Sequence record: PP438435.1
Length of the DNA: 64,000 nucleotides
Reading direction: 5' to 3' (one strand)
The notes beneath the pieces are model-generated. The model ran no database searches and was not told where the DNA came from. It was given only the letters and a program-made list of their open reading frames with translations. Both the position numbers and the translations under genes were made by a program. Within the stretch, counting starts at the first letter, position 1. Every line of letters begins with the position of its first letter. Positions 26,503 through 58,665 of this stretch are shown piece by piece.

Positions 26503-26538
26503 GGATCCCTCCGTGGACGATAAGCAGCGGGTGCGTGA

Positions 26539-26892
26539 TCAGGACGAGGGCGGCGCGCCCGTGCGCTCTTGAACAGCTTGGCGGGACAGGGTGCGGGCGG
26601 TCTCTATGACCAGCACCTCCTGATCCGCCATCAGCTTCAGCGCGTTCGGCAGCACTCCCAAGGCCTGCCAGATCTTGAGGAGCACTTCGAGGTTGACACT
26701 GTTGCCAGCCTCAAGGCGCGCAACAGTGTCGCGATGCACGCCAGCCGCTTCCGCCAACTCCTGCTGGGTCAGCCCCCGCCCCTGCTCCCGAAACTCACGG
26801 ACGTAGCGCCCCAGGTGCTCCAGAGCGGCATTGATCTGGAGCTCAACGGAACGAGCGGCCGTGGTCTTCGTGAGCGGGGGTATGACGGACAT
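26539..26892 (-). CDS. hipB: XRE-family HTH antitoxin (HipB-like)
   Basis: GLTQQELAEAAGVHRDTVARLEAG; directly upstream of hipA. Confidence 0.85.
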   Translation of the reverse strand: MSVIPPLTKTTAARSVELQINAALEHLGRYVREFREQGRGLTQQELAEAAGVHRDTVARLEAGNSVNLEVLLKIWQALGVLPNALKLMADQEVLVIETARTLSRQAVQERTGAPPSS

Positions 26893-27757: not shown

Positions 27758-29992
27758 TTACCGGCCACCGCTCGCCGAAACGCCACCCGACGAGCCCACG
27801 CTTCCCACCGCGCCAGTGGCCTTCCTCGCGGCCCCGCCCACCTGCCCGACACCGCGCTGTGTGGCAGCCCACCAGGCAATTGCCATCGTGCGCGCCTGCT
27901 CGCCCATGTTGCTCTCGCCGAAGGCCTCCATGCGCGCGCCGATGAAGCGCAGAACGCTGTCAGGCACCAGATGGATCAGACTGAAGCTCCAACGCGCCAG
28001 CACCGCGAGAATGGCGCCCGTCAGGAAGATCCACACGACCATGCCAACGATGCCTGGTGCGGTCACGCCCGGGCCTGCCGACGCGCCCGAAAAAATGTGG
28101 AACGCCTTCAGGACAAAGCCGCCCATGAAGTCGAGCACCAGCATGCCGGCCACGAAGCCCGCGATCATCAGCACGGGGCGAGCGACGAGGCTCACCAGCA
28201 GCATGTAGCCGTCCATGGCGCGCTGGCCCGCAAACCCCTCGCCATCGGGTGCGGCGTGCGCCGCGGCCCAGAGAGGCGCCGCCACAACTGCCTGGACCAA
28301 CATCATCAACCACCCTGCCACACCCGCAATCCAGATCAGCAGCGGCAGCGCTGGCACGATGTACGCCATCGTGGCGCCGACAACAAAAATGGGAACGAGC
28401 GCGGAGAACCCCGCCGACAGCAGTGCAAAGCCGCCGACACCCGACAACGCAGACGCGACTACGGACGCAGCTACGACGACCGCCAGCAACCCTGCACTCA
28501 CGACGAGCAGAATGTGACCCCACCGCACAACCCGCGGAATGAGCCCACTGCCGTCATCGAGCGCCGCCTGCATGATCCAGTCGTAGCCCTCACGTGCCGT
28601 TGCCGCCATACGCCGGCCGAGAGCATCAAAAGCGTCCGTCATCGAAGGGCCTGCCATCAGCGCTCCGGTCATTGAGGGCGCTGCCCACATGGCGATCGCC
28701 GAAGTGTCGCCTTCGACGTCCGGGTGCACGTAGGTCGCGGCCGCATCCTCATTGCGCGGAATGATCTGCCTGGCAGCGACGATGTGCGGCACGACGTCCT
28801 GAGCAACAGCAGGAGGCAACTGCCCCGGTGCTGGCTCATCGAACAGCGGCTCCGCATTGATGCTTTCGTTCATCCGCGCATCAAAAGCGGCGAAGGTCAT
28901 ATAGTACGCGCCTGCGACAAGCCAGCCGTTGGCTTCTGCCGTCGCCATCTGTGCCTGTCGAAGCAGGACCTCAGCCCCATTCTTCGCCTGGTTCGCGAGC
29001 AGCGTGCTTCGGCGCATACGCACCAGGTACTCGCCCTCCAAGCTGACCAGTTCACTCCGCACCTGTTCTGCTGACAAGCCGCCCTCCGTACGGGCGGCGA
29101 CGAGATCCCTGACGCGATCCTGTAGATACAGGATCGCTCGACCCTGCTCGCGCAGCGTGAGCTCAGCCGCCTCCCGCTGGAGGACCGACGATGGCTCGAT
29201 GCCCAGGGGCATCTCACGCTGAAGCGTCACGGCGCCACAGAGCGGAACCGCGGATGCGAGATCGCCTTCTCCCGAATACTTCAGAACCCACTTCGCAGTC
29301 CGGGTGCCCTCCCCGCTCCACGGGAACGCACCCGAGCTATCTTCGACGGTCTCGGTGAACCCGGCCGGCGTGGACACTCCAAAGCTCGAAGCAGCCGCGC
29401 CTGACCCGTCGCCCTCAGCACTCTTGCGAACGGCCGCTGCACACGCCTCCAGCTCGTACAGCTTGCTCGCAACGCTAGCGCTGAAGCGTGGCGGCACGGC
29501 AGGCGCGAGCTCCATGCGCTCACTGAGGTAGTTGTTGCTTCGGCTCCACGCCTGATCAGCGAAGCCGCTGCCCTGCATGCCCACCCACAGCACCATGGCC
29601 TGGATGACCGAGTAGCCGCCCAGACTGAGCGGCGTCAGCATGCCCGCCGCAATCGCCACACGCAGCGGCACCCACACCATGGAGTAACGGCCACCCACCT
29701 TGCCATGCTCGCCGGTCTGCATCAGCGCGCTGATGAAGGTCATCAGCACCAGCAGCACGGCAGCAAGGAGCGCTGCCATGTTCACGACGCCGGCAATCGG
29801 CGCCAGGATCGAATCCGAGTTGCGCGCGGTCTCGATGGCGCGGGCCAAGGTCTCCGCATCGACACCGAAGATCCCCTGCACGGCATCACCGCCGCGAACA
29901 CCCTCCATCTGCTGCTGGGCGAGTGCGGCGCCGCTTGCCAGCAGTGCCGAGAGCGACAGCGCGCTGATTCCCCACTTGCGAGTCCAATTCAT
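27758..29992 (-). CDS. dotA: DotA/TraY type IVB secretion membrane protein
   Basis: WVPLRVAIAAGMLTP, YSVIQAMVLWVGMQG, GW..AGAYY, AYIVPALP..IW, APLWAAAH..PDG..RPVLM. Confidence 0.92.
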   Translation of the reverse strand: MNWTRKWGISALSLSALLASGAALAQQQMEGVRGGDAVQGIFGVDAETLARAIETARNSDSILAPIAGVVNMAALLAAVLLVLMTFISALMQTGEHGKVGGRYSMVWVPLRVAIAAGMLTPLSLGGYSVIQAMVLWVGMQGSGFADQAWSRSNNYLSERMELAPAVPPRFSASVASKLYELEACAAAVRKSAEGDGSGAAASSFGVSTPAGFTETVEDSSGAFPWSGEGTRTAKWVLKYSGEGDLASAVPLCGAVTLQREMPLGIEPSSVLQREAAELTLREQGRAILYLQDRVRDLVAARTEGGLSAEQVRSELVSLEGEYLVRMRRSTLLANQAKNGAEVLLRQAQMATAEANGWLVAGAYYMTFAAFDARMNESINAEPLFDEPAPGQLPPAVAQDVVPHIVAARQIIPRNEDAAATYVHPDVEGDTSAIAMWAAPSMTGALMAGPSMTDAFDALGRRMAATAREGYDWIMQAALDDGSGLIPRVVRWGHILLVVSAGLLAVVVAASVVASALSGVGGFALLSAGFSALVPIFVVGATMAYIVPALPLLIWIAGVAGWLMMLVQAVVAAPLWAAAHAAPDGEGFAGQRAMDGYMLLVSLVARPVLMIAGFVAGMLVLDFMGGFVLKAFHIFSGASAGPGVTAPGIVGMVVWIFLTGAILAVLARWSFSLIHLVPDSVLRFIGARMEAFGESNMGEQARTMAIAWWAATQRGVGQVGGAARKATGAVGSVGSSGGVSASGGR

Positions 29993-30004: not shown

Positions 30005-30445
30005 CTAGCCCAGCATCAGCACACCGCGCGACGGCGGGTTACGTTTCGCAAACTCCAGCAGCGCATCCGTGACGCACAGAGCTGCGATCTCAAAAGCAAC
30101 GCCCTTCGGGGCGGCGACAACGCGCTGGCGCATCAGCCCTCCCATGTCGGGCACATTCTCGAAGGTGAAAGGACGGCTCCCGCCGCGGTCGAGCCACGCC
30201 TCCGCATAGACCATCCGCGCCTGCTGCACCAGGATGGGCAACAGTTGGTTCGGAATCAGTGCGAAATCAATCGGCATGTCGAAATCACCGTCTTCGTCGA
30301 GCACGCCATTCGGCGGCGCAATATGTTTCACACCCATGTCGATCAAGAGCCCGCGCAGAAGCGCGATCAACTGATCCACCAGGGCGCCTTCGCGAGGCTC
30401 ACCACGGCTGGGGGCCGCGGGGGGCGTACGAGGTGCGCTCGTCAT
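30005..30445 (-). CDS. IcmS-like small protein
   Basis: LLPILVQQA, GGLMRQRVV and LCVTDALLEF..NPPSR align with recalled IcmS blocks; directly upstream of dotA. Confidence 0.5.
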   Translation of the reverse strand: MTSAPRTPPAAPSRGEPREGALVDQLIALLRGLLIDMGVKHIAPPNGVLDEDGDFDMPIDFALIPNQLLPILVQQARMVYAEAWLDRGGSRPFTFENVPDMGGLMRQRVVAAPKGVAFEIAALCVTDALLEFAKRNPPSRGVLMLG

Positions 30446-31616
30446 CTTCAAACTCCAGTTCGTCGCTGTCCTCGTGCGGCACAGAGACCGCCTCCGGAGA
30501 CAGCCAGGTCCAGTCAGCGTCCGGTTCCAAAACCGTCGCGGGCAGCTCTTCCACGGCCAGCCCGCCCGCATCGTTCGGCGCCGCGCCAGATTCGTCAGAG
30601 GACGCGTGCGCGACCGCCGCCAGGCCCGCCCCATCATCCGTCTCCACCGGCTCTTGGAGCGCATCACGCCGCTCCGCGGGAGCCACCAGCGGCTCGCGCT
30701 CACGCGCTACCGCATCCTCAATCACTTCGGGAACCACGCCTTCAGCGCGACGACGCTCCCAGTAGGCGCGATCCGACGCTGACAGGCCGCAGTCGCTGTC
30801 CGCCTTGGACACCTCAGCCGCAGGTGCCATCTTGGAATCCCCATCGCCCTCGCCGCGCTTGAGCGCCGCACGAAGCCGTGGGGCAAGCTCTGGCATGACC
30901 GCGAAACAGCGCTCGATCAGATCGCCAGGCGGTCCTGCCTCTCCGGCTTCGCCGGCATCGTCCTCGATCACCGCCTCGACCGCGTGCGCGATGCCGGGAA
31001 GCGTCAACGACGGCGGCACATCCGCAAGTGCAGCCTCCCCCAGGGTGGTGAGGCCGCCCGCATCCACAAAGCCGCGCTCAACAGCGCGGATCGCATGATC
31101 GGCGATCGACGACGGACGCCCCAAAGACTCGCGAGCGAGTGCCTCGAAAGCCACCTCTTCAGCATCGAAGTCGAAGAGCTCGGCCTGAACGACACGATCG
31201 CATCCGTCAGCGCCTGAGCGTGCCTCGACGGGGAACTCAGGCCCTGGGCGCCACCACGGCAGATCCCGCGCCCACGCGGGCAGCGCACTGGTGTCAGGCC
31301 GTTCGATCTGCACGGGCACCGCAGCGCGCACATTGGATCGCGCCACGCGATCCAGGAAACGCAGCTCCTCAGACAGCAGATGCTGGGGCACACCCGCGAA
31401 CCCCGGCAGCTCACCCCGCAACACATGCACTGCCTCGTGCGGCTTGCGCGGGCCGATTACGACCGGCTCTGCCACGCTGCCAAGCGCGCCGCGATACAAC
31501 CCCGCGACGCGCGCCACGCCTGCGGCGCCCAGAATCCGGGATGACGTCCGCGGATAGCTGATGTCACCGGCCTCATAGCGGTGCTGGATCGTGGCGGCGG
31601 CGGCAGCTACGCGCAC
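30399..31616 (-). CDS. C-terminal half of a split type IA topoisomerase
   Basis: YEAGDISYPRT catalytic motif, PHEAVH, GRPSS..AVERGFV..LTTLG; GGAGG before GTG. Confidence 0.7.
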   Translation of the reverse strand: MRVAAAAATIQHRYEAGDISYPRTSSRILGAAGVARVAGLYRGALGSVAEPVVIGPRKPHEAVHVLRGELPGFAGVPQHLLSEELRFLDRVARSNVRAAVPVQIERPDTSALPAWARDLPWWRPGPEFPVEARSGADGCDRVVQAELFDFDAEEVAFEALARESLGRPSSIADHAIRAVERGFVDAGGLTTLGEAALADVPPSLTLPGIAHAVEAVIEDDAGEAGEAGPPGDLIERCFAVMPELAPRLRAALKRGEGDGDSKMAPAAEVSKADSDCGLSASDRAYWERRRAEGVVPEVIEDAVAREREPLVAPAERRDALQEPVETDDGAGLAAVAHASSDESGAAPNDAGGLAVEELPATVLEPDADWTWLSPEAVSVPHEDSDELEFEDDERTSYAPRGPQPW

Positions 31617-32395
31617 AGGGCCTCCGCACGTGTTTCAACGCCATCTCCGATGCGCAGCGGAACGGGCCGCCCACACAGCGCCCGCACGAGATCGTTGTAG
31701 TCCCAAGCGGCCTGCGGCCGCAGCCACTCACAGCGGACCGCGGCCAAACCGTGCGCGTTTGCGAGTTCGGACACCCGCTGCTTCCACAGCTCGCGCTCCG
31801 CGGCGGTGTACGCCACTTCCGTGCGCCACGCGGGGCCACCATCCACACTCGCGACCACAAGACGCACCACGCCGACGATCGGCGCCCGCCGGCGAAGACT
31901 CGCCAGCAGCGGCGTCAGAATCCGCCCCGCCGGCGCACCGCGACGGCTGAACGTGTGCCCGATGAGGCGATCCAGGATTCGACGCGCGTCGCCTTGACGA
32001 GCAAGACGCGGGTCCATGGCTTCAGGGGCATCGAGCGCCGCGCGAACGCCCTCGATCGTGATGGATCGAATACGAATGCGCACTACGCTGACGGCCAGGC
32101 CTTGGACAACGCCAGCCACATCCCGGGCGATCACATCTCCTTCGGCGTCGTCGTCCGTCGCCAGCAGCACAGCACGGTCTTTGGCTGCCTCGCGCAGTGC
32201 GCGCTCCGTGCGCGCATCCGCTCGCCGCGACGGCTCCTCGTAACGCGGCGTAATCGCAAGCGGCCACAAGCTCGCCGGCGAACGAAAGAAGTGTCCGCGC
32301 GTGGCCACCACACGCCAACCGTAACCCAGACGACGAAGGATGGCCGTGAGCGTGCTCACCTTGCCAGGCGCCTCGATCACGACCACGCCCTGCAT
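31607..32395 (-). CDS. N-terminal (Toprim) half of a split type IA topoisomerase
   Basis: VIEAPGK, ATRGH, LATDDDAEGDVIA, ARRILDRLIG. Confidence 0.8.
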   Translation of the reverse strand: MQGVVVIEAPGKVSTLTAILRRLGYGWRVVATRGHFFRSPASLWPLAITPRYEEPSRRADARTERALREAAKDRAVLLATDDDAEGDVIARDVAGVVQGLAVSVVRIRIRSITIEGVRAALDAPEAMDPRLARQGDARRILDRLIGHTFSRRGAPAGRILTPLLASLRRRAPIVGVVRLVVASVDGGPAWRTEVAYTAAERELWKQRVSELANAHGLAAVRCEWLRPQAAWDYNDLVRALCGRPVPLRIGDGVETRAEALCA

Positions 32396-32396: not shown

Positions 32397-32987
32397 TCAG
32401 GCGCCCAGCTGAGGCGCCGCAGCGGCGCGGTGCTTGGGAGGATCCAGGTTATCGATCGCGGCGTCGAGCTTGGCCAACACGTCCGTCAGCCCGGGCACAT
32501 CCCTCGGCAGTACGCCGAGCTGCTTCTTGGCGCGCTCCAGTTCGGCCGCGCCCTCGAGCGCCGCCTCAGCGGCGCGTCCCTGGGCCACGCCGTGCTCGTA
32601 GTTGGCGCCCACTGCAGTCAGCATGCGCTCCGCATGCTGACTTACCGCCTCGCCCAGCGCCTTGCGCTGATCCGGCAGTGCCCACATCTCGCCCATCGAC
32701 TTCGCTGCCGCCACACGAACAGGCTCGGGTAGCAGCTCGTTCTTGCGAACCGCCTCAAGCTCGGCCACGGTGCCGGCAGCGTACGGCTGAAGCAGGCCCT
32801 TCAGGTGATCGAAGGCCTGCCGCAGAAGGAACATCGGATTGCCGTCTTCCTCAGCAATCTCCCGCAGCATTCGCTCGCGGCTGCTCTGCGAGACCAAGCC
32901 TCGCAGAGCGACTGCGCGCTGCTCATCCCTGGATCGGCCGAGGCTACGTGCCAACGGCATCTCCGGCGTCAGGTTCATTCCATTCAT
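32397..32987 (-). CDS. Hypothetical helical protein
   Basis: GGAG RBS; in the tra operon; ends APQLGA. Confidence 0.7.
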   Translation of the reverse strand: MNGMNLTPEMPLARSLGRSRDEQRAVALRGLVSQSSRERMLREIAEEDGNPMFLLRQAFDHLKGLLQPYAAGTVAELEAVRKNELLPEPVRVAAAKSMGEMWALPDQRKALGEAVSQHAERMLTAVGANYEHGVAQGRAAEAALEGAAELERAKKQLGVLPRDVPGLTDVLAKLDAAIDNLDPPKHRAAAAPQLGA

Positions 32988-33009: not shown

Positions 33010-34098
33010 TCAGTCCTGCCGTATCACGCGCGCATGTTCGGCCTGAAGCTGCCGACTGCGCTCATTGAGGCCCTGGTTGGCGATCATTGCCAACAGCAGC
33101 GTCTGTTCCTGCTCGATCTGAAGGCGTTCGGTATCCACCCAGAGCTGGGCCGACATCGTCAGCTGCATCTCGCGCAGCAGACCCGCCTCCGTCTTGGCCG
33201 CCAGCTCGATCGGGCGCTCACTCGACTCGATGCCGTCGATTGCCCACTGTTTGACGGTTGCCAGATAGCTACGTTCGCCCTCGCCTTGCGCGACACGCAT
33301 GGCCGCATGGCGCGCCACGATCTCAGCAGGCAAGGCCGCCGACGCGCGGTAGAGCTCCGCCTTCGCCTCGTACTCGGTGAGCGCCGCCGTGCTGCCACCG
33401 CTGGACGGGGCGCGAGGAACGGGCTCGGGCGTCAGAGCCAGCGAGATCGCGTCGCGGACGCGCTCGGCCTCTTCCACCGGGATTGTGTCTCGCATCAAGT
33501 AGTCCGGCTTCAGTGCGTCCTGCGTGCCGTTGTACTTGGCCAGCGTGGCGCGGAGATTGGCCATCGATCCGGCATAGCTGCCATAGCCCGCAGCATTGGT
33601 CGCGATCGCACGCTGTGATTCCTGGAAGCTGCGATCGCGCACGCGGCTCTGAGCCTGCAGCCGACGCGCATCTGACGTCCGGCGGCACGCGGACGGGGCG
33701 TTCGCTCCCACGGTCACCGTCTGCCCGTTGACCTGCATGGTCATCAAGGTGCCGAAGGTGCGGTTGTAGATAGCCTCTTCCGCAGCCGCGGTCTGCTGGG
33801 CGATGGTCTCGACCATCACGCCGGCATGCTGCTGCAGCGCCTGCTGGGTGCCCAGGGTATTTGCCGCCACCTGCTCGACCACGGCGCCATCGCCCTTCTC
33901 GACGACGATCGACTGCATGACTTGCTCTGCAAGCCACTGCTGCATGATCGGCCAGAATCCCGTGAACCAAGCAATCCACGCAGCAGCATCGCCGCCCGTC
34001 GCTCGCGCCACCGGCGCGGCGGCAACGCCTACACCGAGCACGACTCCCAGAAGGATGCTGGACGCTTTGCCTGCAAAGGTGTTCCGAATCGACATCAC
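33010..34098 (-). CDS. TraW/IcmX-like exported conjugation protein
   Basis: Signal peptide; C-terminal LLREMQLTMSAQLW..E..EQTLLLA pattern; tra context. Confidence 0.55.
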   Translation of the reverse strand: MMSIRNTFAGKASSILLGVVLGVGVAAAPVARATGGDAAAWIAWFTGFWPIMQQWLAEQVMQSIVVEKGDGAVVEQVAANTLGTQQALQQHAGVMVETIAQQTAAAEEAIYNRTFGTLMTMQVNGQTVTVGANAPSACRRTSDARRLQAQSRVRDRSFQESQRAIATNAAGYGSYAGSMANLRATLAKYNGTQDALKPDYLMRDTIPVEEAERVRDAISLALTPEPVPRAPSSGGSTAALTEYEAKAELYRASAALPAEIVARHAAMRVAQGEGERSYLATVKQWAIDGIESSERPIELAAKTEAGLLREMQLTMSAQLWVDTERLQIEQEQTLLLAMIANQGLNERSRQLQAEHARVIRQD

Positions 34099-34532
34099 AC
34101 GCCCTCCGTACTCGGCCGCGCACCCTGCCGCGACTCAAGCGCAAATCGATCAGAGGCCTCGCGCGCCAGCTGGTGGACGTCCTCGGGCGTGTGCGCATCC
34201 GTGATCGCGTCGAGCACGACTTGACAGAGCGCATCGCCGCTGATCGACCCGATGATGCGGCGGATCGCGCTGCCAATGCCGGCACCGATGCGCCCGAATC
34301 CGCCCATGTTGATGGTTCGCGCCAGGCAGCCCAGGTTGTACTTGCGCAGCGCCGGCGTGATCGCGCGACGCACATTCTGCGTACTGAGGGCCCCCATCCG
34401 ATCAGCGATGGAGTTGCCCGCCTGACTGACGACGCAGTCCTCCTGGGAGGCCTGAGCCAGGGCACCGGTGCTGAAGACGAGCGCGGCACAGGCGAGTGCA
34501 ATGGCGAGAAACTGTTTGATCCGATCGAACAT
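34095..34532 (-). CDS. Small exported protein with three mature-region Cys
   Basis: Signal peptide ending ALA-Q; coupled to the traW-like gene. Confidence 0.65.
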   Translation of the reverse strand: MFDRIKQFLAIALACAALVFSTGALAQASQEDCVVSQAGNSIADRMGALSTQNVRRAITPALRKYNLGCLARTINMGGFGRIGAGIGSAIRRIIGSISGDALCQVVLDAITDAHTPEDVHQLAREASDRFALESRQGARPSTEGV

Positions 34533-34543: not shown

Positions 34544-34972
34544 TTACATCGACGGGGACACACGGACGACTTCACGCGTCCGGTAGATGATGCGCGTCAG
34601 CGCGAACACGGCACGCAGAAACCCCGCCCGCCCTGCGACCAGCGCGGCCAGAACGGAGCCCGGCCGAACCGCAGCCTCGACGTCCGCCAACCAGTTCTCG
34701 TCGTAGCGCTCGACGGCGCCAAAGAGGCGCAGCGACTCCGGTGCAGGAAGCAGAGCGAACACGCGCGCCGTCAGCCTCGGGTTGCGACGCAAACGCTGCA
34801 TGATCTCCCCGTCGTGCCGCTCGACAGAGGCCAGCAGACGCGCGTACAGACGCTGACCATTCACTGACAGCGGCGGGATCCAGCCCTCGGCTTCCTGGAG
34901 CGCGTTCGCGACCAGGCCCACCTCGATGGAGCCGTCAAAGATCGATCTCTGGAGAGCCAGGGCGTGCCGCAT
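34544..34972 (-). CDS. IcmW-like protein
   Basis: LQEAEGW, ESLRLFGAVER and FLRAVFALTRII resemble recalled IcmW blocks; divergent from dotL. Confidence 0.55.
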   Translation of the reverse strand: MRHALALQRSIFDGSIEVGLVANALQEAEGWIPPLSVNGQRLYARLLASVERHDGEIMQRLRRNPRLTARVFALLPAPESLRLFGAVERYDENWLADVEAAVRPGSVLAALVAGRAGFLRAVFALTRIIYRTREVVRVSPSM

Positions 34973-35115
34973 GCGACGATGCCTTCAATTTTTAGCGGAA
35001 TGCGTCCAGAATACGCCAACGCCGACGCGCTCTGCAATGCGTGATCGAAGGCTCCCGATCGGGCCCGAATCTTGCCTCTCAGCCCCTTCGCCCCATCCCA
35101 AGGACACGACACACG

Positions 35116-37680
35116 ATGGCAAACCGGCCCAAGGGTGTACGTCAGCGCGACGAAGCGCTGCTTCGCAACGTCCGGCGAGATCCCCGACGCTTCTCGCAGC
35201 AGATTGCTGACATCTGGCGCACGCCGGAGGGCGCCGCGATCACGCTCTTTCTGGTCGCAGCCCTGCTCTTCCTCCAGCCGGCTGCGGTCTATCTGCTGCC
35301 GCTGTTCCTGCTGTTCCTGCTTCCGCTGCACTTCAGCGAACGCAGGCACCGCCACTTGCCGATGCGATTGCCGATCGAAGCCGGGATCGTTGACTACAAC
35401 GATCCAAAGCCGCAGCACGCGGGCTTTGCCAAGGCGCGCGGCATGGTGCTCATCGGCAACAGCACAGACGACAACGGCGAAGAGCTCTGGAGCTCGCGCT
35501 CGGACGAGCTCACCCACTCGCTCACCATCGGCGCTACCGGCGCGGGCAAGTCCGTCATGCTGGTCGGCAACAGCGCCAACTACCTCGCCTTCGGTGGCGG
35601 CCTGATCTACTCGGATGCGAAGGCGTCGCCGAGTCTCTATTGGGACATCGCCACCATCGCGTTCCGCATGGGGCGCGAAGACGACCTGCAGACCATCAAC
35701 TACATGACCGGCAACCGGACGATCTCCGGCATCAGTGCCTCCCGGTCGTCGAACACGACCAACCCCTTCGTCGGCGGGAGCGCCGACAGCTGGATCCAGA
35801 CGCTGTCCTCGCTGATCAAAGAGCCCGACGGCCAGAACGCTGTGTTCGGCGAGCGGGCGCTCGCCATGGTCTCCGCGCTGCTCTACGGCATGCACGCGCT
35901 CAATTCCGAAGGCCATTGCGACATCGGAGTCGGCACCATCCGCGATCACCTGCCCATCGAAGCCTTCGAGCAGCTCGCCTACGACCCTCGCATCGAAGGA
36001 CGGCCGTCGGCGGTTCTCGCCATGCGCAGCTACCTGAAGTCACTGCCGGGGTATAAGCCCCCGGCGGAGCGGATCAAGAAAGACCGCAGCGGCGTTGTCA
36101 TCACAGGCCCAGACGGCAAGCCAGTCCTCGAAGGCCATGCCGAACAGGTCTACAACCAACATGGCTTCGCGCAGATGTACTTCACGCGCGCAATGTCATC
36201 GCTCACCGATACCTACGGCCACATCTACGCGGGCAATCTCCCAGAGGTCGACTACGTCGATACCGTGCGCCGCCGGCGCATCCTCGTGATCATGCTGCCG
36301 GCGCTTGAGAAGTCCCTCGCCGAGATCTCGAACCTCGGCAAGATCAACCTCGCAGCGCTGCGCGACGCGGTGAGCACAGGCCTCGGCAGCGGACTGGAAG
36401 GCCACAAAGCGGGTGTGCTGGACAATCTGCCCACCGACAGTCCGATCGCTACGCGAATCATCCTCGACGAAGCGGGCTACCAGATGGTGGAAGGCTTCGC
36501 CATCCTCGCAGCCCAGGCCCGCGGTCTGGGCTTCTCCGTCGAATGGGCCGGACAGGACTGGGCTGGCATCAAGCGCGGCTCCGAGAAAGAAGCGGAGCAA
36601 ATCTGGTCGAACACGACCATGAAGCGCTTCGGCAGGCTGGAGGATGCAGAGACCTTCCAGAAGCTGCAGACGCAGACGGGCGAAGCGCTGATCGCCCAGG
36701 CCCGAGGCTACGCCTACGATGCCGATGGCATCTCGAGCTACAGGGACACTGGCGATGTCGGCTTGGAGAAGCGTCAGCGTGTGGATTTCAACGACCTCCA
36801 GCAGCAGGTCGAGGGTGAGTTCCACATCGCCTGGCGCGGCCGCTTGATCCGTGGTGTGGCGTTTGCGGCACTGCTGCCATCGATCAAGACCCTGCAGATC
36901 AACCGCTACCTGCGCGTCGGTGAGCGCAATCTCAAGCTGTTGGATGACACCCCACCGTCAGACGCAGCATCCGACCGCGGCGGCAAGAGCGGTGGCGGCA
37001 TGGCGGCGACCCCCACCCGCCCCGCTGCCGGTGCAATGCCGGCCCGGTCCACACCGCCAACCGATGAGGGCTCTGGCGACGCCCCGACGGAACCACGCGC
37101 CCCAATGCGCCCGCGGCCCGGCCGTACTTCACAGGCTGCTGCTGCGGCCGCGCTTACGCCGCGCCTCGACACGCCGCCCGCAGCCCGTCCCGACACCGCT
37201 TCTGCTACCGCACGCACCGGTGAGCGCATCGACGACCTGGAAGCACTGCTGGCCATGGACGCCAACGCGGACTTCAGCGGCGACTCGGCGCCTGGCGATC
37301 GCCTTGCCGGCAATGCGCCCGGCGCGGCGTCCGACCACGGACTGGACGACCTGCTGGGTCTCCCGAGCTGGAGCACGGCCCCCACCACGCCGGCGGACGT
37401 CCTCGAATCGGACAGTGGCGCACCGGCAGAGCTCCAGATCGAGGACATGCCCGACGTGATCGATCTGCGCACCCTGCTCGGCGAAGGCAGCGCTGGCGAG
37501 GCGTTGGTCCACGACCACGTCCAAGCGGCCCTCGACAGCTACCCCGATCGCGAGACCCTGGCTGCCGCCAACGAGCTCGACCCGAACGAGATCGTGGCCG
37601 ACCTCGAGGCCGCGATGAAATATCTGCTCGACGGCGATCCGCCCCACGACGACGAGTCCATCGGAGGACCCTTCGGATGA
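35116..37680 (+). CDS. dotL: Type IV coupling protein DotL/IcmO/TrbC
   Basis: N-terminal TM, HSLTIGATGAGKS, YSDAKA, ILDEAGY, LPALEKS, QARGLGF; long C-terminal extension. Confidence 0.92.
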   Translation: MANRPKGVRQRDEALLRNVRRDPRRFSQQIADIWRTPEGAAITLFLVAALLFLQPAAVYLLPLFLLFLLPLHFSERRHRHLPMRLPIEAGIVDYNDPKPQHAGFAKARGMVLIGNSTDDNGEELWSSRSDELTHSLTIGATGAGKSVMLVGNSANYLAFGGGLIYSDAKASPSLYWDIATIAFRMGREDDLQTINYMTGNRTISGISASRSSNTTNPFVGGSADSWIQTLSSLIKEPDGQNAVFGERALAMVSALLYGMHALNSEGHCDIGVGTIRDHLPIEAFEQLAYDPRIEGRPSAVLAMRSYLKSLPGYKPPAERIKKDRSGVVITGPDGKPVLEGHAEQVYNQHGFAQMYFTRAMSSLTDTYGHIYAGNLPEVDYVDTVRRRRILVIMLPALEKSLAEISNLGKINLAALRDAVSTGLGSGLEGHKAGVLDNLPTDSPIATRIILDEAGYQMVEGFAILAAQARGLGFSVEWAGQDWAGIKRGSEKEAEQIWSNTTMKRFGRLEDAETFQKLQTQTGEALIAQARGYAYDADGISSYRDTGDVGLEKRQRVDFNDLQQQVEGEFHIAWRGRLIRGVAFAALLPSIKTLQINRYLRVGERNLKLLDDTPPSDAASDRGGKSGGGMAATPTRPAAGAMPARSTPPTDEGSGDAPTEPRAPMRPRPGRTSQAAAAAALTPRLDTPPAARPDTASATARTGERIDDLEALLAMDANADFSGDSAPGDRLAGNAPGAASDHGLDDLLGLPSWSTAPTTPADVLESDSGAPAELQIEDMPDVIDLRTLLGEGSAGEALVHDHVQAALDSYPDRETLAAANELDPNEIVADLEAAMKYLLDGDPPHDDESIGGPFG

Positions 37681-38240
37681 ACAACGTTCGCTTTCTCTGC
37701 ACGCTGCTGGCGCTCAGCGCACTGGCCCCAGCACTCGCGGCCGCGACCGCGACGGCGCCCAAACGCCTTGCCGGCCTCGACAACCCAGAGCACATCCAGT
37801 GCGCGCGGACGGCAGCACGCACCTTCCGCGTGCCGTTCGCGGCCGTACTGATCCTGCTCGATGTCGAACGCGGCTGGGCCGGCGCCGAGCAGCCGAACCG
37901 GAATGATGACGGCGAAGTTGTGAGCTACGACTTGGGCCCGATGCAGATCAACGACCGGGCCTGGCTCAGCACGTTCGAGTCCGCCGGCATCACCCGTGAT
38001 CAGCTGAGGGACGACGCCTGCATCAACATCCACGCCGGCGTCTGGATCTTCGGCCGCCACCTGCATGACATCCGAGCAGAGCACGCCGCGCTCGCCCCGG
38101 AGGAGCGCGCCACGCGCAACCCTGCTGAGGTGGAAGCGGTGCTTCGTTACCACTCACGCACGCCCAAGTACCAAGAGCGCTACCTGGAGCATGTGCGCAA
38201 AGCCGTCGACCGCGGCCTGCGCGCAGTAGCGCAGCAGTGA
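37677..38240 (+). CDS. Lytic transglycosylase (SLT family)
   Basis: ILLDVERG (catalytic Glu), LGPMQIN, CINIHAG, YHS; signal peptide. Confidence 0.88.
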   Translation: MNNVRFLCTLLALSALAPALAAATATAPKRLAGLDNPEHIQCARTAARTFRVPFAAVLILLDVERGWAGAEQPNRNDDGEVVSYDLGPMQINDRAWLSTFESAGITRDQLRDDACINIHAGVWIFGRHLHDIRAEHAALAPEERATRNPAEVEAVLRYHSRTPKYQERYLEHVRKAVDRGLRAVAQQ

Positions 38241-42635: not shown

Positions 42636-42660
42636 GGTTCTCTCCAGAGTTGCCCGGCGC

Positions 42661-45139: not shown

Positions 45140-45171
45140 CGTCAGTTCCCTTGCTGGGTTGCGGTCTTGTA

Positions 45172-45756: not shown

Positions 45757-45766
45757 GGTGACTCCA

Positions 45767-51961: not shown

Positions 51962-51962
51962 C

Positions 51963-55886: not shown

Positions 55887-56189
55887 TCAATCGAAGGTTG
55901 CACTCACCGACGGTCGTAGGCGCCGGTGAGTGAGGTGGCTACGTCTGTAGCCGAGCGTCACGATCCACAGTGCTGCAGAGCGCACACCGGCTACCGGTGA
56001 CACGCGGAACAGCCCTAGGATCATGAAGATGGTGGTCGAGCCCAGGGCCAGGTAGAAGGTCCAAGGGCGCGCCCAGAAAAGCAGAATGAGGAACGGGAAG
56101 AGCGCTCGCGCATCGATCACCCCCAGAATCTTTGGGGTCTCTGCGGTGAAGCGCCACATGCAGCTCTTGCCGATCAAAGACTCAGACAT
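55887..56189 (-). CDS. icmT: IcmT/TraK
   Basis: MWRFTA..PKI...DARA.FP. Confidence 0.85.
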   Translation of the reverse strand: MSESLIGKSCMWRFTAETPKILGVIDARALFPFLILLFWARPWTFYLALGSTTIFMILGLFRVSPVAGVRSAALWIVTLGYRRSHLTHRRLRPSVSATFD

Positions 56190-57333
56190 GACCTGCACCT
56201 TCCTTCCATTCCGCTTCGATCAACTCGAACTCGCCAGCAGCGAGTTCGTCGTAGTGCCGCTCAGCGGCACACAGCAGGGATTGGTGGCGCTCACGCACCC
56301 ACCTGTGGACGAGGGGCTGAAGCGCATCCGGATCCGTCTTCGCCAGCACGTGGCGCATGTCCTGATCGACAACCAACCACTCACGCAACGCCACGCGCCC
56401 GCCCGACTTCGCACGTACGAGCCGCTGCGTCATCATCAAACGAATCACGTCGACCAAGCGCGCCTGGATGCCGCGCATCTCGTCGCGCGGGTACTCGGCC
56501 ACCATGCGCGGCAGCGCAGCCGCGACAGAGTGCGCGTGCAGAGTGGTGTACACCGCATGGCCGGTGAGGGCGGCCGTGACCGTTGCACCGATAGTGGGTC
56601 GATCACGAGCCTCACCGACCAGGATGACGTTCGGCGCGCGACGCAGCGCGTTGGAAACGCCTTCAGAGAAGGTCTGCACGTGCCGAGGGACTTCTGTCTG
56701 CGTCACCAGCCCCTTCGATCCGGGCTTCACGCCCAAGTTGAACTCGATAGGGCTTTCGTACGTGATGATGTTGAGCGGGTAATTCGTGGCGATGTCGTCG
56801 ACCATGGCCGCGAGCGTGGTCGACTTACCGGTGCCGGTGGCGCCAATCACCAGGACGAGTCCTTGCGACAGCGCAACATCGCGATGCGCATCGACGATGG
56901 CCTGCTCCAACCGCACATCGTCCAGAGTTGGCGTGTGCTCCGGGATCACGCGCAGAACGACGTCGATTCCGTTCACCGTATCGGAAGTCGCTCCGGCAGT
57001 AGCGTTGACGCGAAAGCGCAGGCGGCGCGTCCGGGCAGAGCCGATCTGGTAGGCGAAATCGATGGGCGAGCCGCCAGACAGCAATGCGGGTGCGTTGGCT
57101 GCGTACATGACGGACAAGAGCTCTTCCAGCTCCTGGCGCACCAGACGACGATTGGCAATGCGTCGCCAACTGCCAGCGAAACGCGCAGCGGGGCGCTCAT
57201 CCGACTGCAGCTTGATGTCTGAGACCTTCTGGTTGACAGCCCATTCAAGCAGCGCAGCCAGCTCCGCCACGCCAAGACGCGGCGGATCCTGATCGCCCCA
57301 CGGCGACGGGCTGGAGCCCCCGGCATTGCTCAC
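56182..57333 (-). CDS. dotB: DotB/TraJ ATPase
   Basis: SDIKLQS, GATGTGKSTT, ITYESPIEF, LRRAP..ILVGEARD, TGH..Y.TLH, ALREW. Confidence 0.92.
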   Translation of the reverse strand: MSNAGGSSPSPWGDQDPPRLGVAELAALLEWAVNQKVSDIKLQSDERPAARFAGSWRRIANRRLVRQELEELLSVMYAANAPALLSGGSPIDFAYQIGSARTRRLRFRVNATAGATSDTVNGIDVVLRVIPEHTPTLDDVRLEQAIVDAHRDVALSQGLVLVIGATGTGKSTTLAAMVDDIATNYPLNIITYESPIEFNLGVKPGSKGLVTQTEVPRHVQTFSEGVSNALRRAPNVILVGEARDRPTIGATVTAALTGHAVYTTLHAHSVAAALPRMVAEYPRDEMRGIQARLVDVIRLMMTQRLVRAKSGGRVALREWLVVDQDMRHVLAKTDPDALQPLVHRWVRERHQSLLCAAERHYDELAAGEFELIEAEWKEGAGHV

Positions 57334-58178
57334 TGCAGCACCTCTTCCTGCAGCACGCGCACACGCGGAGACGAGGGCACGGCAGCGCGCGGCATGGCGC
57401 GCCACTCGCGCGGACTGGCGAAAGCCGCTGCCTGGCGCACAGTGAACAGTGCGTCCTCGATCCGAACGACCTCATCTTCGGTCACGATGCCGAAATCAGT
57501 CTGCCCGATGGCGGCCGGCTGGATGATCTTCTGATCGACCAGCATCCGATAGCGCACGCGACCGAGGTAGGCCTCGCTCAGCACAGCCAGCTCCCCGCGA
57601 AAAACTGCGTCAGCCTGCCGGCGCCCCACGCTCCATGCCTCTTCGAGCGCCGCGCGCCACACCTCGCGCTCTGCGGCGTTGGTGGGGAGCAAGTCGTCGG
57701 ACGGACGCTCCGCAGCCACGGTCGAGGAAGCCCCCCAGGCGGACAGGTAGTCGCGCCACGTTGGCGCTGCGGTCACGAGCTTGGCCGCCTCGACGATGCG
57801 GAGCACTCGGCCCGTTTCGCGAAGCTGCGTGCCGTCAGCCTCAATGGCACTCACTTCACGCACCAGCTCGACAGCCGGCACGAGGAGGCGTCCTTGATCC
57901 AGGAGCACGTTGAAGTTGTAGATCCGATCGAGCTCAGGCGCCATGGCCTGCAGCCGCTCGCGGATCTCGGCGGCGCGTTCCTTGTAAGCAATGCTGACGC
58001 CGGTGGCGAGCGCAGCTTCTCGCACGGCAGCTTCTCGCACTGCGCGAGCAGCATCGCCCTCGATAGCCCGCGCAGTGCGAGGCTTCATCGCCTCAACCTC
58101 AGCGCGAACCGAGACTTGCGCGGACGCCGAAGTCAACGTCAACGCGGAAAGCAGCAGAGCCAGCCCGACCCGCACCAT
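57330..58178 (-). CDS. dotC: DotC/TraI
   Basis: VREAAL..G, LDRIYNF..L, APTWRDYL, G.RQAD..F. Confidence 0.88.
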   Translation of the reverse strand: MVRVGLALLLSALTLTSASAQVSVRAEVEAMKPRTARAIEGDAARAVREAAVREAALATGVSIAYKERAAEIRERLQAMAPELDRIYNFNVLLDQGRLLVPAVELVREVSAIEADGTQLRETGRVLRIVEAAKLVTAAPTWRDYLSAWGASSTVAAERPSDDLLPTNAAEREVWRAALEEAWSVGRRQADAVFRGELAVLSEAYLGRVRYRMLVDQKIIQPAAIGQTDFGIVTEDEVVRIEDALFTVRQAAAFASPREWRAMPRAAVPSSPRVRVLQEEVLQ

Positions 58179-58179
58179 G

Positions 58180-58665
58180 TCAGCGGTACACCACTTCGAT
58201 GGTGCGCGACGGCGAACGCACGATGACGTTGGCTCGGCTACCGGCCTGCTGGCCAAGCGATCGGAGCAGGTGACCCGCCGAATCGCCGGCAGAGCTCACC
58301 AGAACAACGATCGGTTGCGAGGGGCGCGCGCCAACCACCATGAACTCCCAGCCGACGAACGCGGCAACCGCTTCGACGGCCTGCTCGAGCTCACCGTGCC
58401 AGTCCATCTCCACGCTCACCTGAAGGTCGGCGGGCAAGCGCTCCAGCGGGAAAGTCGCGGGAGGCACCTGCTGGCTCAAGCCGCCGTTCATCGCCGACTG
58501 CCCCATGAGACCGTTCAACGCAATGCTGACGTGCTCTGCGTGTGACGAGATCTCAGCCATCAGCGGGTCCGGCTGAGCGGGGATGGCCTTGGGCGCAGAT
58601 GCGCAAGCAGACAGTGACAACAGCGCAAGAGCAGCAACGCACGCTTGGTTTCGGATCCGCTTCAT
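58180..58665 (-). CDS. dotD: DotD/TraH lipoprotein
   Basis: Lipobox LSAC, DWHGELE, LLRSLGQQAG. Confidence 0.88.
   Translation of the reverse strand: MKRIRNQACVAALALLSLSACASAPKAIPAQPDPLMAEISSHAEHVSIALNGLMGQSAMNGGLSQQVPPATFPLERLPADLQVSVEMDWHGELEQAVEAVAAFVGWEFMVVGARPSQPIVVLVSSAGDSAGHLLRSLGQQAGSRANVIVRSPSRTIEVVYR

What the first reader, a model, noticed from the sequence alone, without database searches (positions are those of the whole stretch)
34544..37680. IcmW-like gene divergent from a DotL that has an extended C-terminal tail
Seen: a 142-aa protein with IcmW-like blocks (itself ending VSPSM). DotL continues about 250 aa beyond the ATPase domain as a Pro/Ala linker and an acidic end, QAALDSYPDRE...ELDPNEIVADL, which recalls the C-terminal segment of Legionella DotL. 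Established: the DotL C-terminal extension binds IcmSW. Inference: a DotL-IcmSW-type coupling complex exists here.
Basis: partly seen in the sequence, partly recalled or inferred. Interest (0 to 1): 0.72.

Follow-up and report, generated by a model that had tools for sequence, protein, structure and literature searches.

The report
DotL-type coupling protein with IcmW/IcmS-like adaptors
A rare environmental mobile element carries a DotL-type secretion "gatekeeper" ATPase with a long acidic tail, plus very diverged relatives of the Legionella adaptor proteins IcmW and probably IcmS, so this adaptor platform is probably not confined to Legionella-like pathogens.

Summary
ORF 34544-34972 (-) encodes a 142-aa protein ending VSPSM. 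Across a 143-bp gap lies a DotL/TrbC-family coupling protein (most likely 35116-37680, 854 aa; the GTG at 35041 gives 879 aa). It has a 251-aa extension beyond the ATPase: a Pro/Ala spacer and an acidic end.

The 142-aa protein has no direct family hit, but three tests tie it to IcmW:
- 7 of 18 family members weakly hit NCBIfam IcmW_IVB.
- Its profile matches plasmid proteins that include RefSeq-annotated IcmW (hhalign 96%, E 4.5e-9).
- A confident AlphaFold model has Legionella IcmW chains as its only good PDB matches.

A candidate IcmS-like gene lies at 30005-30445 (-), just upstream of DotA/TraY in the same operon. IcmS chains are the only PDB sequence hits of its profile (E 0.017).

The tail shows no detectable sequence similarity to the Legionella DotL tail or to any of 3,935 plasmid homologues. 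Binding is therefore inferred, not shown.

All 12 distinct loci of this rare, metagenome-only clade (this window and 11 related ones) keep the IcmW-like gene near the coupling-protein gene; it is directly adjacent in 11.

Verdict: a DotL-IcmSW-type module in a conjugation-like I-type element, and a new, highly diverged variant of a known kind.

The parts
35116..37680 (+). DotL/IcmO/TrbC-family type IV coupling protein, 854 aa from the ATG. The open frame begins at GTG 35041, which gives the 879 aa quoted in the finding.
   Evidence: PDB 6sz9_A IcmO(DotL): E 2.8e-109, query 32-626 aligned to DotL 4-590. NCBIfam TrbC_conju: 7.8e-84, 282 bits, below the 800-bit equivalog cut-off. Pfam TraG-D_C. 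Walker A and B motifs are visible in the translation. Orthologues start at the ATG.
36925..37680 (+). C-terminal extension of the coupling protein (251 aa): a variable Pro/Ala-rich spacer followed by a conserved acidic end.
   Evidence: Composition. No PDB hit for a tail profile. None of 3,935 plasmid homologues aligns beyond about residue 644. Pairwise identity of the spacer is 15-53% against 53-91% for the core.
37408..37677 (+). Distal 90 residues of the tail, strongly acidic (net charge about -19). This is the proposed docking segment for the adaptors.
   Evidence: Better conserved than the spacer between the closer orthologues; between the most distant ones the two are about equally diverged. 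It diverges at nearly the same rate as the IcmW-like protein (21-80% against 20-78%). Charge. Alignments.
34973..35115 (.). Divergent intergenic region of 143 bp. It holds a nearly invariant block of about 60 bp (about 34980-35042), presumably regulatory.
   Evidence: DNA alignment of four loci (three distinct sequences; two are identical here) whose flanking proteins are only 68-84% identical. The simple sigma-70 scan found no site.
34544..34972 (-). IcmW homologue, 142 aa, all-helical. It is basic here (pI 10.9) and is the first gene of the operon.
   Evidence: AlphaFold2 model with pLDDT 89.8. Foldseek top hits are 5x90_F and 5x1e_B, the IcmW chains: probability 0.99, TM 0.52-0.59; every other hit has probability 0.20 or less. 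hhalign against plasmid IcmW proteins: 96%, E 4.5e-9, 119 columns, with negative controls. IcmW_IVB is hit by 7 of 18 family members. The window protein itself has no direct Pfam, NCBIfam or PDB sequence hit.
34095..34532 (-). 145-aa protein with an N-terminal signal-peptide-like segment. It is conserved directly downstream of the IcmW-like gene.
   Evidence: Translation and hydrophobic segment. Present at the same position in every fully read locus. No family hit.
33010..34098 (-). 362-aa protein with one N-terminal hydrophobic segment. Conserved; function unassigned.
   Evidence: synteny.
32397..32987 (-). 196-aa soluble protein, conserved, function unassigned.
   Evidence: A profile of six orthologues finds no T4BSS protein in the PDB. 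No family hit.
31607..32395 (-). 262-aa Toprim-domain protein (N-terminal part of a type IA topoisomerase).
   Evidence: Pfam Toprim. NCBIfam topA_bact 1.8e-18 over model positions 2-157. It is a separate ORF in every related locus read that far.
30399..31616 (-). 405-aa protein with faint similarity to the type IA topoisomerase core. It is the partner ORF of the Toprim protein.
   Evidence: Weak Topoisom_bac hits here and in relatives. Two of 35 neighbour proteins hit DNA topoisomerase 3.
30005..30445 (-). Candidate IcmS-like protein, 146 aa, soluble and acidic, encoded immediately upstream of DotA/TraY. It starts at an internal ATG of ORF 30005-30703.
   Evidence: A profile of nine orthologues against the PDB: the only four hits at E<=10 are IcmS chains, E 0.017, profile 50-130 aligned to IcmS 24-98. 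A narrower six-sequence profile gave E 0.45 with IcmS on top. There is no NCBIfam hit and no structure model. Conserved position in every locus that extends that far.
27758..29992 (-). DotA/TraY family inner-membrane protein, 744 aa, the last T4BSS gene of the operon.
   Evidence: TIGR04346 DotA_TraY: 4.1e-91, 306.6 bits, above the cut-off of 100.
37677..38240 (+). TrbN/SLT-like lytic transglycosylase, 187 aa, overlapping the coupling-protein stop codon.
   Evidence: NCBIfam TrbN 3.6e-11 and Pfam SLT 0.0041. Conserved next to the coupling protein in relatives.
55887..58665 (-). A further T4BSS block in the window. It comprises IcmT/TraK (55887-56198), DotB/TraJ ATPase (56182-57405), a 308-aa protein in the DotC position (57330-58256) and the DotD lipoprotein (58180-58665).
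   Evidence: IcmT_TraK 1.1e-13, above cut-off. DotB 3e-80. DotD 2.8e-15. The 308-aa protein matches the pMAQU01 gene lying between its secretion ATPase (best match of the window's DotB) and its DotD (blastp 2e-27).
59401..60669 (-). MobQ-family relaxase, 422 aa. It indicates that the element transfers DNA.
   Evidence: NF041496 MobQ: 4.3e-69, 232 bits, above the cut-off of 200.

Best explanation
Window 27.7-38.2 kb encodes the substrate-receiving (coupling) module of a rare I-type (type IVB) secretion and conjugation system.

**Shown**
- A DotL/TrbC-family coupling ATPase carries a 251-aa C-terminal extension. The extension is a fast-evolving Pro/Ala spacer followed by a conserved, strongly acidic end of about 90 aa.
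- Transcribed divergently from it is an operon that opens with a true but very diverged IcmW homologue.
- The operon runs through five conserved genes and ends with a candidate IcmS-like protein and DotA/TraY.

**Inferred by analogy with Legionella**
- The IcmS-like and IcmW-like proteins form a heterodimer that is clamped by the distal tail of the coupling protein.
- This would give each ATPase subunit a flexible, tethered adaptor platform that captures protein substrates and hands them to the secretion channel.
- The window also carries a MobQ relaxase, ParB and an IncI-like thin-pilus cluster. The substrates are therefore most likely proteins that travel with, or alongside, the transferred DNA, rather than effectors aimed at eukaryotic hosts.
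For: **Coupling protein**
- E 2.8e-109 to DotL in PDB 6sz9_A over the whole ATPase.
- TrbC_conju 7.8e-84.

**IcmW homologue**
- AlphaFold2 model, pLDDT 89.8.
- The IcmW chains of 5x90 and 5x1e are the only Foldseek hits with high probability: 0.99, TM 0.52-0.59.
- hhalign against five plasmid proteins, two of them RefSeq-annotated icmW: 96%, E 4.5e-9, 119 columns.
- Controls with two other families from the same operon gave about 0.1%.
- The family HMM picks only the annotated icmW among all ORFs of 98 kb of pMAQU01 (E 1.9e-5).
- 7 of 18 family members hit IcmW_IVB collinearly. None of 35 neighbouring proteins does.

**IcmS-like candidate**
- The only PDB hits of the nine-orthologue profile are IcmS (E 0.017).
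- The E-value was 0.45 with a narrower profile, so it improved as the profile was broadened.

**Linkage**
- All 12 distinct loci (this window and 11 related) have the IcmW-like gene close to the coupling-protein gene. It is directly adjacent in 11 and separated by two AbiEii-type genes in one.
- Every coupling protein read in full is 839-927 aa, so all carry a tail.

**Tail**
- The distal 90 aa and the IcmW-like protein diverge in parallel (80/78, 63/68, 37/46, 28/28% identity), while the ATPase core stays at 53-91%.
- The tail end has a charge of about -19, and the IcmW-like protein has pI 10.9 in this lineage.

**Established knowledge**
- The DotL C-terminal extension binds IcmSW, DotN and LvgA (PMC7251119, PMC3441705).
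Against:
- The tail has no detectable sequence similarity to the Legionella DotL tail or to any plasmid TrbC/DotL tail.
- Parallel divergence of the tail and the IcmW-like protein could simply reflect two weakly constrained sequences on one phylogeny.
- The IcmS assignment rests on 18 bits. No NCBIfam family supports it.
- The window protein is basic, whereas IcmW and IcmS are described as small acidic proteins (PMC8896642).
- DotM and DotN homologues were not found in the window.
- In the Marinobacter plasmids that carry annotated icmW, no IcmS-like gene was detected in the 98 kb searched.
Confidence: 0.6

Rival explanations
1. The adaptors are real, but the system is a protein-delivery weapon, not mainly a conjugation machine. 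On this reading the IcmSW-like pair recruits toxic or other effectors, as chaperones do in effector-translocating type IVB systems such as the bacteria-killing kib system of Pseudomonas putida IsoF. This differs from the best explanation only in the kind of substrate.
For: - The P. putida IsoF kib cluster is a type IVB system with an annotated icmW, and it delivers a toxic effector into bacteria (PMC9519443; PMC13664640).
- Many conserved operon genes here have no assigned function.
- A HipA kinase toxin pair is conserved next to DotA/TraY.
Against: - The window carries a MobQ relaxase above its curated cut-off, ParB and an IncI-like thin-pilus cluster. This is the gene set of a DNA-transferring element.
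- No effector-immunity pair was recognised.
- HipBA is more simply an addiction module.
Confidence: 0.2
2. The acidic tail end docks a relaxosome protein, not the IcmW/IcmS-like pair. The precedent is the F-plasmid coupling protein TraD, whose acidic C-terminal tail binds TraM (my own knowledge of that system). On this reading the IcmW-like protein acts elsewhere, for example on substrates alone or on DotA-side components.
For: - The tail shows no sequence similarity to the DotL tail.
- C-terminal extensions of coupling proteins vary greatly and serve different partners (PMC7251119).
- A MobQ relaxase is present.
- In the Marinobacter, Pseudomonas, Stutzerimonas and Teredinibacter plasmids the IcmW(-like) gene sits divergent from DotA/TraY. 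In pMAQU01 it is about 8 kb from the coupling-protein gene.
Against: - In this clade the IcmW-like gene is directly adjacent to the coupling-protein gene in 11 of 12 distinct loci and separated by two genes in the twelfth. This holds in both divergent and tandem orientation.
- The tail end and the IcmW-like protein diverge at matching rates.
- Their charges are complementary in this lineage.
- No relaxosome accessory gene was identified near the coupling-protein gene.
Confidence: 0.12
3. The small helical protein only resembles IcmW and is not an adaptor. It could be, for example, a regulator acting on the invariant intergenic block. The tail would then be a disordered, low-complexity appendage without a specific partner.
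For: - The window protein has no direct family hit.
- The Foldseek E-values are weak (0.2-0.4) and the TM-scores are near 0.5.
- Small helical proteins can converge in shape.
- A nearly invariant block of about 60 bp lies just upstream of the gene.
Against: - Sequence-based profile-profile homology to annotated IcmW is strong and covers nearly the whole length: 96%, E 4.5e-9, 119 columns. The controls are clean.
- No DNA-binding domain was found.
- The distal tail is conserved well above the spacer between the closer orthologues.
Confidence: 0.06

Closest known systems
Legionella pneumophila DotL-IcmS-IcmW(-LvgA) coupling-protein adaptor subcomplex (PDB 5X1E, 5X90, 6SZ9)
   Same: - A DotL-family ATPase, collinear over about 590 residues.
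- A C-terminal extension of about 200-250 aa.
- An IcmW-fold protein and an IcmS-like protein.
- All are encoded within a type IVB gene set that includes DotA, DotB, DotD and IcmT.
   Different: - The tail sequences are unrelated at detectable level.
- No LvgA, DotN or DotM homologue was found in the window.
- The IcmW-like protein is basic here.
- The gene order differs: the IcmW-like gene is next to the coupling-protein gene, and the IcmS-like gene is next to dotA.
- The host element looks conjugative (MobQ, ParB, thin pilus), not like the virulence system of an intracellular pathogen.
icmW of the MPF_I plasmids pMAQU01 (Marinobacter nauticus VT8, NC_008738.1) and pSMR5 (M. salarius), with unannotated relatives on Pseudomonas aeruginosa, Stutzerimonas and Teredinibacter plasmids
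   Same: - The small proteins are homologous (hhalign 96%, E 4.5e-9; HMM E 1.9e-5).
- They are associated with DotA/TraY.
- The pMAQU01 coupling protein is the best plasmid match (39.6% identity) and also has a long tail (950 aa).
   Different: - On those plasmids icmW is divergent from DotA/TraY; on three of the five a membrane protein of about 175 aa precedes DotA/TraY. On pMAQU01 icmW lies about 8 kb from the coupling-protein gene.
- No IcmS-like gene was detected in the 98 kb of pMAQU01 searched.
- tblastn with the window's IcmW-like and IcmS-like proteins finds nothing real in 72,556 plasmids.
TrbC coupling proteins of IncI1 (R64, ColIb-P9) and IncM (pCTX-M3) conjugative plasmids
   Same: - The same coupling-protein family (TrbC_conju 7.8e-84; about 26-30% identity).
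- The same kind of element, with an I-type mating apparatus and, on IncI1 plasmids, a thin type IVb pilus.
   Different: - The score is far below the TrbC equivalog cut-off (282 against 800 bits).
- No IcmS or IcmW partner is described for those plasmids (PMC6112013).
- Their C-terminal parts do not align with this tail.
- The relaxase here is MobQ, not NikB-type.
kib type IVB secretion system of Pseudomonas putida IsoF
   Same: A type IVB system outside Legionellales, on a horizontally acquired island, with an annotated icmW and a TrbN/DotD block (PMC9519443).
   Different: - It is shown to deliver a toxic effector into bacteria.
- No icmS is reported for it.
- I could not compare sequences because its genome is not in the searchable collections.

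Membership tests
IcmW (NCBIfam NF038222 IcmW_IVB; Legionella IcmW) | Scores above the curated cut-off (100 bits) of the IcmW_IVB equivalog model | tested here: not met
   The window protein has no hit at E<=1. Seven of 18 family members hit at only 13-16 bits, E 0.012-0.06.
IcmW (NCBIfam NF038222 IcmW_IVB; Legionella IcmW) | Homology to proteins accepted as IcmW, shown by profile-profile comparison | tested here: met
   hhalign of A3 against A12 (two RefSeq-annotated icmW plus three relatives): 96%, E 4.5e-9, 119 columns. Controls gave about 0.1%. HMM against pMAQU01 ORFs: only icmW is hit, E 1.9e-5.
IcmW (NCBIfam NF038222 IcmW_IVB; Legionella IcmW) | The IcmW three-dimensional fold | tested here: met
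   Model with pLDDT 89.8. The top two of 350,542 PDB chains are the 148/149-residue chains of 5x1e and 5x90, with probability 0.99 and TM 0.52-0.59; all other hits have probability 0.20 or less. Chain identity follows from 5x1e_A and 5x1e_D being IcmS and from the crystallised DotL fragment being residues 656-783.
IcmW (NCBIfam NF038222 IcmW_IVB; Legionella IcmW) | Small acidic cytosolic protein | tested here: inconclusive
   It is 142 aa, with no signal peptide and no convincing membrane helix. However, its pI is 10.9 here and 8.3-11.1 in its near relatives, while the distant members of the family are acidic to near-neutral, pI 4.8-6.9.
IcmW (NCBIfam NF038222 IcmW_IVB; Legionella IcmW) | Forms a heterodimer with IcmS and binds the DotL C-terminal extension | not testable with these tools
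The supporting evidence is indirect: adjacency, parallel divergence and charge.
IcmS | Sequence similarity to IcmS | tested here: inconclusive
   The nine-orthologue profile has IcmS chains as its only PDB hits at E<=10: E 0.017, 18 bits, profile 50-130 aligned to IcmS 24-98. No NCBIfam family was hit by any orthologue.
IcmS | The IcmS fold and pairing with IcmW | not tested
DotL/IcmO/TrbC type IVB coupling proteins | N-terminal membrane segment plus a DotL-type ATPase domain with Walker motifs | tested here: met
   E 2.8e-109 to 6sz9_A over DotL 4-590. The hydrophobic N-terminal segment and the Walker A and B motifs are visible in the translation.
DotL/IcmO/TrbC type IVB coupling proteins | Equivalog of IncI TrbC (NF041447, cut-off 800 bits) | tested here: not met
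   282 bits. It belongs to the same family but is not an IncI TrbC equivalog.
DotL/IcmO/TrbC type IVB coupling proteins | C-terminal extension homologous to the adaptor-binding extension of Legionella DotL | tested here: not met
   An extension of similar length is present, but the whole-protein alignment stops at DotL residue 590, and a tail profile finds no PDB sequence at E<=10.
I-type (MPF_I / type IVB) mating-pair-formation system | Presence of signature components | tested here: met
   DotA/TraY and IcmT/TraK score above their cut-offs. DotB and DotD are clear hits below the equivalog cut-offs. The core channel genes (DotG, DotH, DotF, DotO) and DotM and DotN were not found within the 64-kb window.

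The most novel reading that the evidence does not exclude
The IcmS-IcmW-tail adaptor platform may not be an invention of the Legionellales made for host manipulation. It may instead be an older or horizontally shared accessory of I-type conjugation systems. In these elements it would recruit element-encoded proteins for transfer into recipient bacteria alongside the DNA. Candidates are the soluble proteins encoded between the two adaptor genes, including the conserved two-ORF topoisomerase-like pair.
Probability: 0.25. Interest if true: 0.75.

Novelty: new variant of a known kind. Interest (0 to 1): 0.55.

Why it matters
IcmS and IcmW are usually presented as adaptors that the Legionellales added when a conjugation machine became an effector injector. 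An ancestral reconstruction places their gain in the Legionellales ancestor (PMC8896642).

Here an IcmW homologue, a probable IcmS relative and a tailed DotL-type coupling protein sit together in an element with the hallmarks of DNA transfer. The element is found only in environmental metagenomes and two MAGs: one Dokdonella, one binned as Gemmatimonadales.

With the annotated icmW genes on Marinobacter plasmids, this indicates that the adaptor platform is more widely spread among I-type systems than the literature says. It offers a simpler, non-pathogen setting in which to study how a coupling-protein tail and its chaperones select protein substrates.

It also supplies profiles that can annotate two families now labelled hypothetical.

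Tried and rejected
**Searches that found nothing**
- Direct searches with the 142-aa protein (Pfam, NCBIfam, PDB sequence) found nothing relevant.
- The first AlphaFold model, from seven close sequences, had pLDDT 59.7. Its Foldseek matches were meaningless.
- A word-indexed search with the 18-sequence profile gave no new relatives.
- A search with the tail region returned only the window's own cluster.
- A genome-collection scan with IcmW-like patterns found none.
- A scan with coupling-protein patterns found only two MAGs.
- Nucleotide search of plasmids gave only short ATPase-motif matches.
- tblastn of three IcmW-like proteins and two IcmS-like proteins against plasmids gave no true hit.
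- The sigma-70 promoter and terminator scan of the intergenic region found nothing.
- The supplements of the IsoF paper gave no gene table I could use.

**Hits judged spurious**
- The best tblastn hit, on an Aeromonas record, spans two unrelated genes of a phage-like plasmid.
- P0011, a 916-aa hit of the representative search, is a tandem-repeat artefact.

**Other IcmS, LvgA or DotN candidates rejected**
- The 145-aa protein has a signal peptide.
- The 196-aa family has no T4BSS match in the PDB.
- The 81-85-aa gene upstream of the coupling-protein gene in three related loci is absent from this window.
- The proteins of about 175 aa upstream of DotA/TraY on the comparison plasmids are membrane proteins unrelated to the IcmS-like family.

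- While reasoning I compared the invariant intergenic block with a sigma-54 promoter consensus recalled from memory. It did not fit well, I drew no conclusion from it, and nothing in this report rests on it.

Full report
**1. What is in the sequence**

The window has 62-68% GC throughout. Real genes stand out by a GC3 near 0.8.

The 142-aa ORF at 34544-34972 (-) and the long ORF at 35041-37680 (+) both have this pattern and read as the finding says. The long ORF opens at a GTG. Orthologues from related contigs align only from the ATG at 35116. The coupling-protein gene is therefore most likely 35116-37680 (854 aa), and the divergent intergenic region is 143 bp.

**2. The large protein**

- It matches full-length Legionella IcmO(DotL) in PDB entry 6sz9 with E 2.8e-109. 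The match is collinear from residue 32 to 626 of the 879-aa reading, against DotL 4-590.
- It matches the NCBIfam IncI TrbC model at 7.8e-84. The score of 282 bits is far below that model's 800-bit equivalog cut-off.
- It is thus a DotL/TrbC-family type IVB coupling protein, but not an IncI TrbC.

After the last conserved core motif come 251 residues. They have 29% Pro+Ala and 18% Asp+Glu, and the final 90 residues carry a net charge of about -19.

Seven orthologues were aligned. Their pairwise identities were:

| Region | Pairwise identity |
|---|---|
| ATPase core | 53-91% |
| Spacer | 15-53% |
| Last 90 residues | 21-80% |

The end of the tail is clearly better kept than the spacer between the closer orthologues. 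Between the most distant ones the two are about equally diverged.

The tail is not detectably similar to anything else:
- A six-sequence tail profile finds no PDB sequence at E<=10, although DotL(656-783) and full-length DotL are in that library.
- None of 3,935 plasmid TrbC/DotL homologues aligns beyond about residue 644.

**3. The 142-aa protein**

Direct searches give nothing. The family is tiny:
- six close relatives in 5.8 billion clustered proteins;
- 16 representatives at E<=0.001 in 1.84 billion. One of them is a repeat artefact;
- all unnamed or labelled 'hypothetical', and all but one from metagenome sources.

Three independent lines tie the family to IcmW.

- **(a) Weak family hits.** Each of 18 family members was scanned separately. 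Seven hit NCBIfam IcmW_IVB, always collinearly over most of the length (for example protein 18-133 against model 25-139 of 139). The scores were only 13-16 bits. None of 35 other proteins from the same loci hit that model, and no family was hit by more than two of them.
- **(b) A named comparator.** The best plasmid match of the coupling protein is on Marinobacter nauticus pMAQU01. That plasmid carries a RefSeq-annotated icmW, and so does pSMR5. Three further plasmids carry unannotated relatives. A profile of those five proteins matches the family profile at 96% probability, E 4.5e-9, over 119 columns. Two other operon families gave about 0.1% as controls. The family HMM picks out only the annotated icmW among all ORFs of 98 kb of pMAQU01 (E 1.9e-5).
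- **(c) Fold.** With the 18-sequence alignment, AlphaFold2 gives an all-helical model with pLDDT 89.8. Its two best matches among 350,542 PDB chains are the 148- and 149-residue chains of the DotL(656-783)-IcmS-IcmW(-LvgA) crystals. They score probability 0.99 and TM 0.52-0.59; every other hit has probability 0.20 or less. Chains A and D of 5x1e are named IcmS and the DotL fragment is 128 residues long. These chains are therefore IcmW.

I conclude that the protein is a very diverged IcmW homologue.

**4. The operon and an IcmS-like candidate**

The genes downstream of the IcmW-like gene, on the same strand, are:

| Coordinates | Product |
|---|---|
| 34095-34532 | 145-aa protein with a signal peptide |
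| 33010-34098 | 362-aa protein with one N-terminal hydrophobic segment |
| 32397-32987 | 196-aa soluble protein |
| 31607-32395 | Toprim protein |
| 30399-31616 | 405-aa protein with faint topoisomerase-core similarity |
| 30005-30445 | 146-aa soluble acidic protein |
| 27758-29992 | DotA/TraY (4.1e-91, above cut-off) |

The 146-aa protein has no family hit. A profile of six orthologues has IcmS chains as its top four PDB hits at E 0.45. With nine more diverse orthologues the E-value improves to 0.017. The aligned span grows to profile 50-130 against IcmS 24-98, and IcmS chains are then the only hits at E<=10 among 177,635 sequences.

The score is weak. But the hit improves as the profile broadens, and it lands on the one partner that the IcmW finding predicts. 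I rate the IcmS assignment at about 0.7.

**5. Conservation of the arrangement**

There are 12 distinct loci: this window and 11 related ones from metagenomes and two MAGs (one Dokdonella, one binned as Gemmatimonadales).

- In every one the IcmW-like gene lies close to a coupling-protein gene; every coupling protein read in full is 839-927 aa. It is directly adjacent in 11 loci, usually divergent and in two loci in tandem. In one locus two AbiEii-type genes lie between them.
- Every locus that extends far enough keeps the order: signal-peptide protein, ~360-400 aa, ~200 aa, Toprim, topoisomerase-like, IcmS-like, DotA/TraY, then an HTH-HipA pair.

Identity of the IcmW-like protein tracks that of the distal tail closely: 78/80, 68/63, 46/37, 28/28 and 49/46%. 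This is what interacting partners would show. It could also arise from two weakly constrained sequences on one tree.

**6. What kind of element this is**

The window also carries:
- IcmT/TraK, DotB, a protein in the DotC position, and DotD;
- a TrbN-like transglycosylase;
- an IncI-like type IVb pilus cluster at 41.4-55.9 kb;
- a MobQ relaxase above its cut-off, and ParB;
- many plasmid-style accessory genes.

This is the gene set of a DNA-transferring plasmid or integrative element. It is not that of a virulence system of an intracellular pathogen. The channel genes and DotM and DotN were not found within the 64 kb.

**7. How it most likely works**

*Shown:* homologues of DotL and IcmW, and probably of IcmS, are encoded together, and the coupling protein has a tail with a conserved acidic end.

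*Established for Legionella:* the DotL extension binds IcmSW, DotN and LvgA, and forms the substrate-recognition module (PMC7251119, PMC3441705).

*Inferred:* here the IcmS-like and IcmW-like proteins pair and are held by the distal tail at the end of a flexible Pro/Ala tether, where they recruit protein substrates. I give this 0.6.

The rivals are:
- the same platform serving a protein-delivery weapon like the P. putida kib system (0.2);
- the acidic tail docking a relaxosome protein instead (0.12);
- a mere look-alike with no adaptor role (0.06).

**8. Comparison with what is known, and novelty**

- IcmS and IcmW are reported as gained in the Legionellales ancestor (PMC8896642).
- IncI and IncM plasmids have no described IcmSW (PMC6112013).
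- A Yersinia type IVB plasmid lacks both (PMC13664640).
- There are precedents outside Legionellales: the P. putida kib island has an annotated icmW (PMC9519443), and RefSeq annotates icmW on two Marinobacter plasmids.

An IcmW relative on a mobile I-type system is therefore not new in kind. The new points are:
- a far more diverged subfamily that escapes standard annotation;
- its tight linkage to the coupling-protein gene;
- the accompanying IcmS-like candidate, for which I found no counterpart in 72,556 plasmids;
- the conjugation-like setting.

I file it as a new variant of a known kind, with interest 0.55.

**9. Limits**

- No interaction was tested.
- The IcmS call is weak.
- The tail-to-DotL likeness is positional and compositional only.
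- The host organism and the completeness of the secretion system are unknown.

Noticed in passing
window 30399-32395 (-): A type IA topoisomerase-like protein is encoded as two adjacent ORFs (Toprim 262 aa, core-like 405 aa) inside the type IVB operon, between the IcmW-like and IcmS-like genes. It is two ORFs in every related locus read that far, so the split is conserved and is not a local break. The products could be transferred substrates.
   Followed up: partly
window 25186-26892 (-): An HTH (HipB-like) and HipA kinase toxin-antitoxin pair follows DotA/TraY. The same pairing recurs downstream of DotA/TraY in at least seven related loci; one locus (L016) has two HipA genes beside its coupling-protein gene.
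   Followed up: partly
window 34980-35042: A block of about 60 bp in the divergent intergenic region is nearly invariant across loci whose flanking proteins are only 68-84% identical. It is probably a shared promoter or operator. The sigma-70 scan found no site.
   Followed up: partly
window 41373-55903 (-): An IncI-like type IVb (thin) pilus cluster: secretin, PilO-like protein, two T2SSE-family ATPases, T2SSF platform protein, bundlin-like pilin, a minor pilin with an N-terminal methylation motif, and an actin-like ParM/MreB-type protein.
   Followed up: partly
window 59401-61894: A MobQ-family relaxase (59401-60669, -) lies divergent from a ParB-family partition protein (60824-61894, +). 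The origin of transfer may lie in the 154-bp gap between them.
   Followed up: no
window 699-16226: A run of plasmid accessory genes:
- GmrSD-like nuclease N-domain
- DUF5983
- DUF4326
- a full-length Topo III-like gene (11017-13164, -)
- DUF7007 with ankyrin-like repeats
- a HerA/DUF87-like ATPase
   Followed up: no
L019 8707-12508 (pMAQU01); L020-L023: On five gammaproteobacterial plasmids the IcmW(-like) gene is divergent from DotA/TraY; on three of them a membrane protein of about 175 aa precedes DotA/TraY. From my recollection (not checked here), this echoes the Legionella icmV-icmW-icmX/dotA neighbourhood. Only the two Marinobacter copies are annotated icmW; the other three are 'hypothetical'.
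   Followed up: partly
window 34544-34560 (C-terminus of the 142-aa protein) and alignment A3: Most members of the IcmW-like family end in a short proline-containing C-terminal motif followed by Met or Leu (here VSPSM). Its significance is unknown.
   Followed up: no
L007 8697-8954; L009 2712-2957; L015 9643-9891: Some related loci carry an extra 81-85-aa gene directly upstream of the coupling-protein gene. This window has no counterpart.
   Followed up: partly
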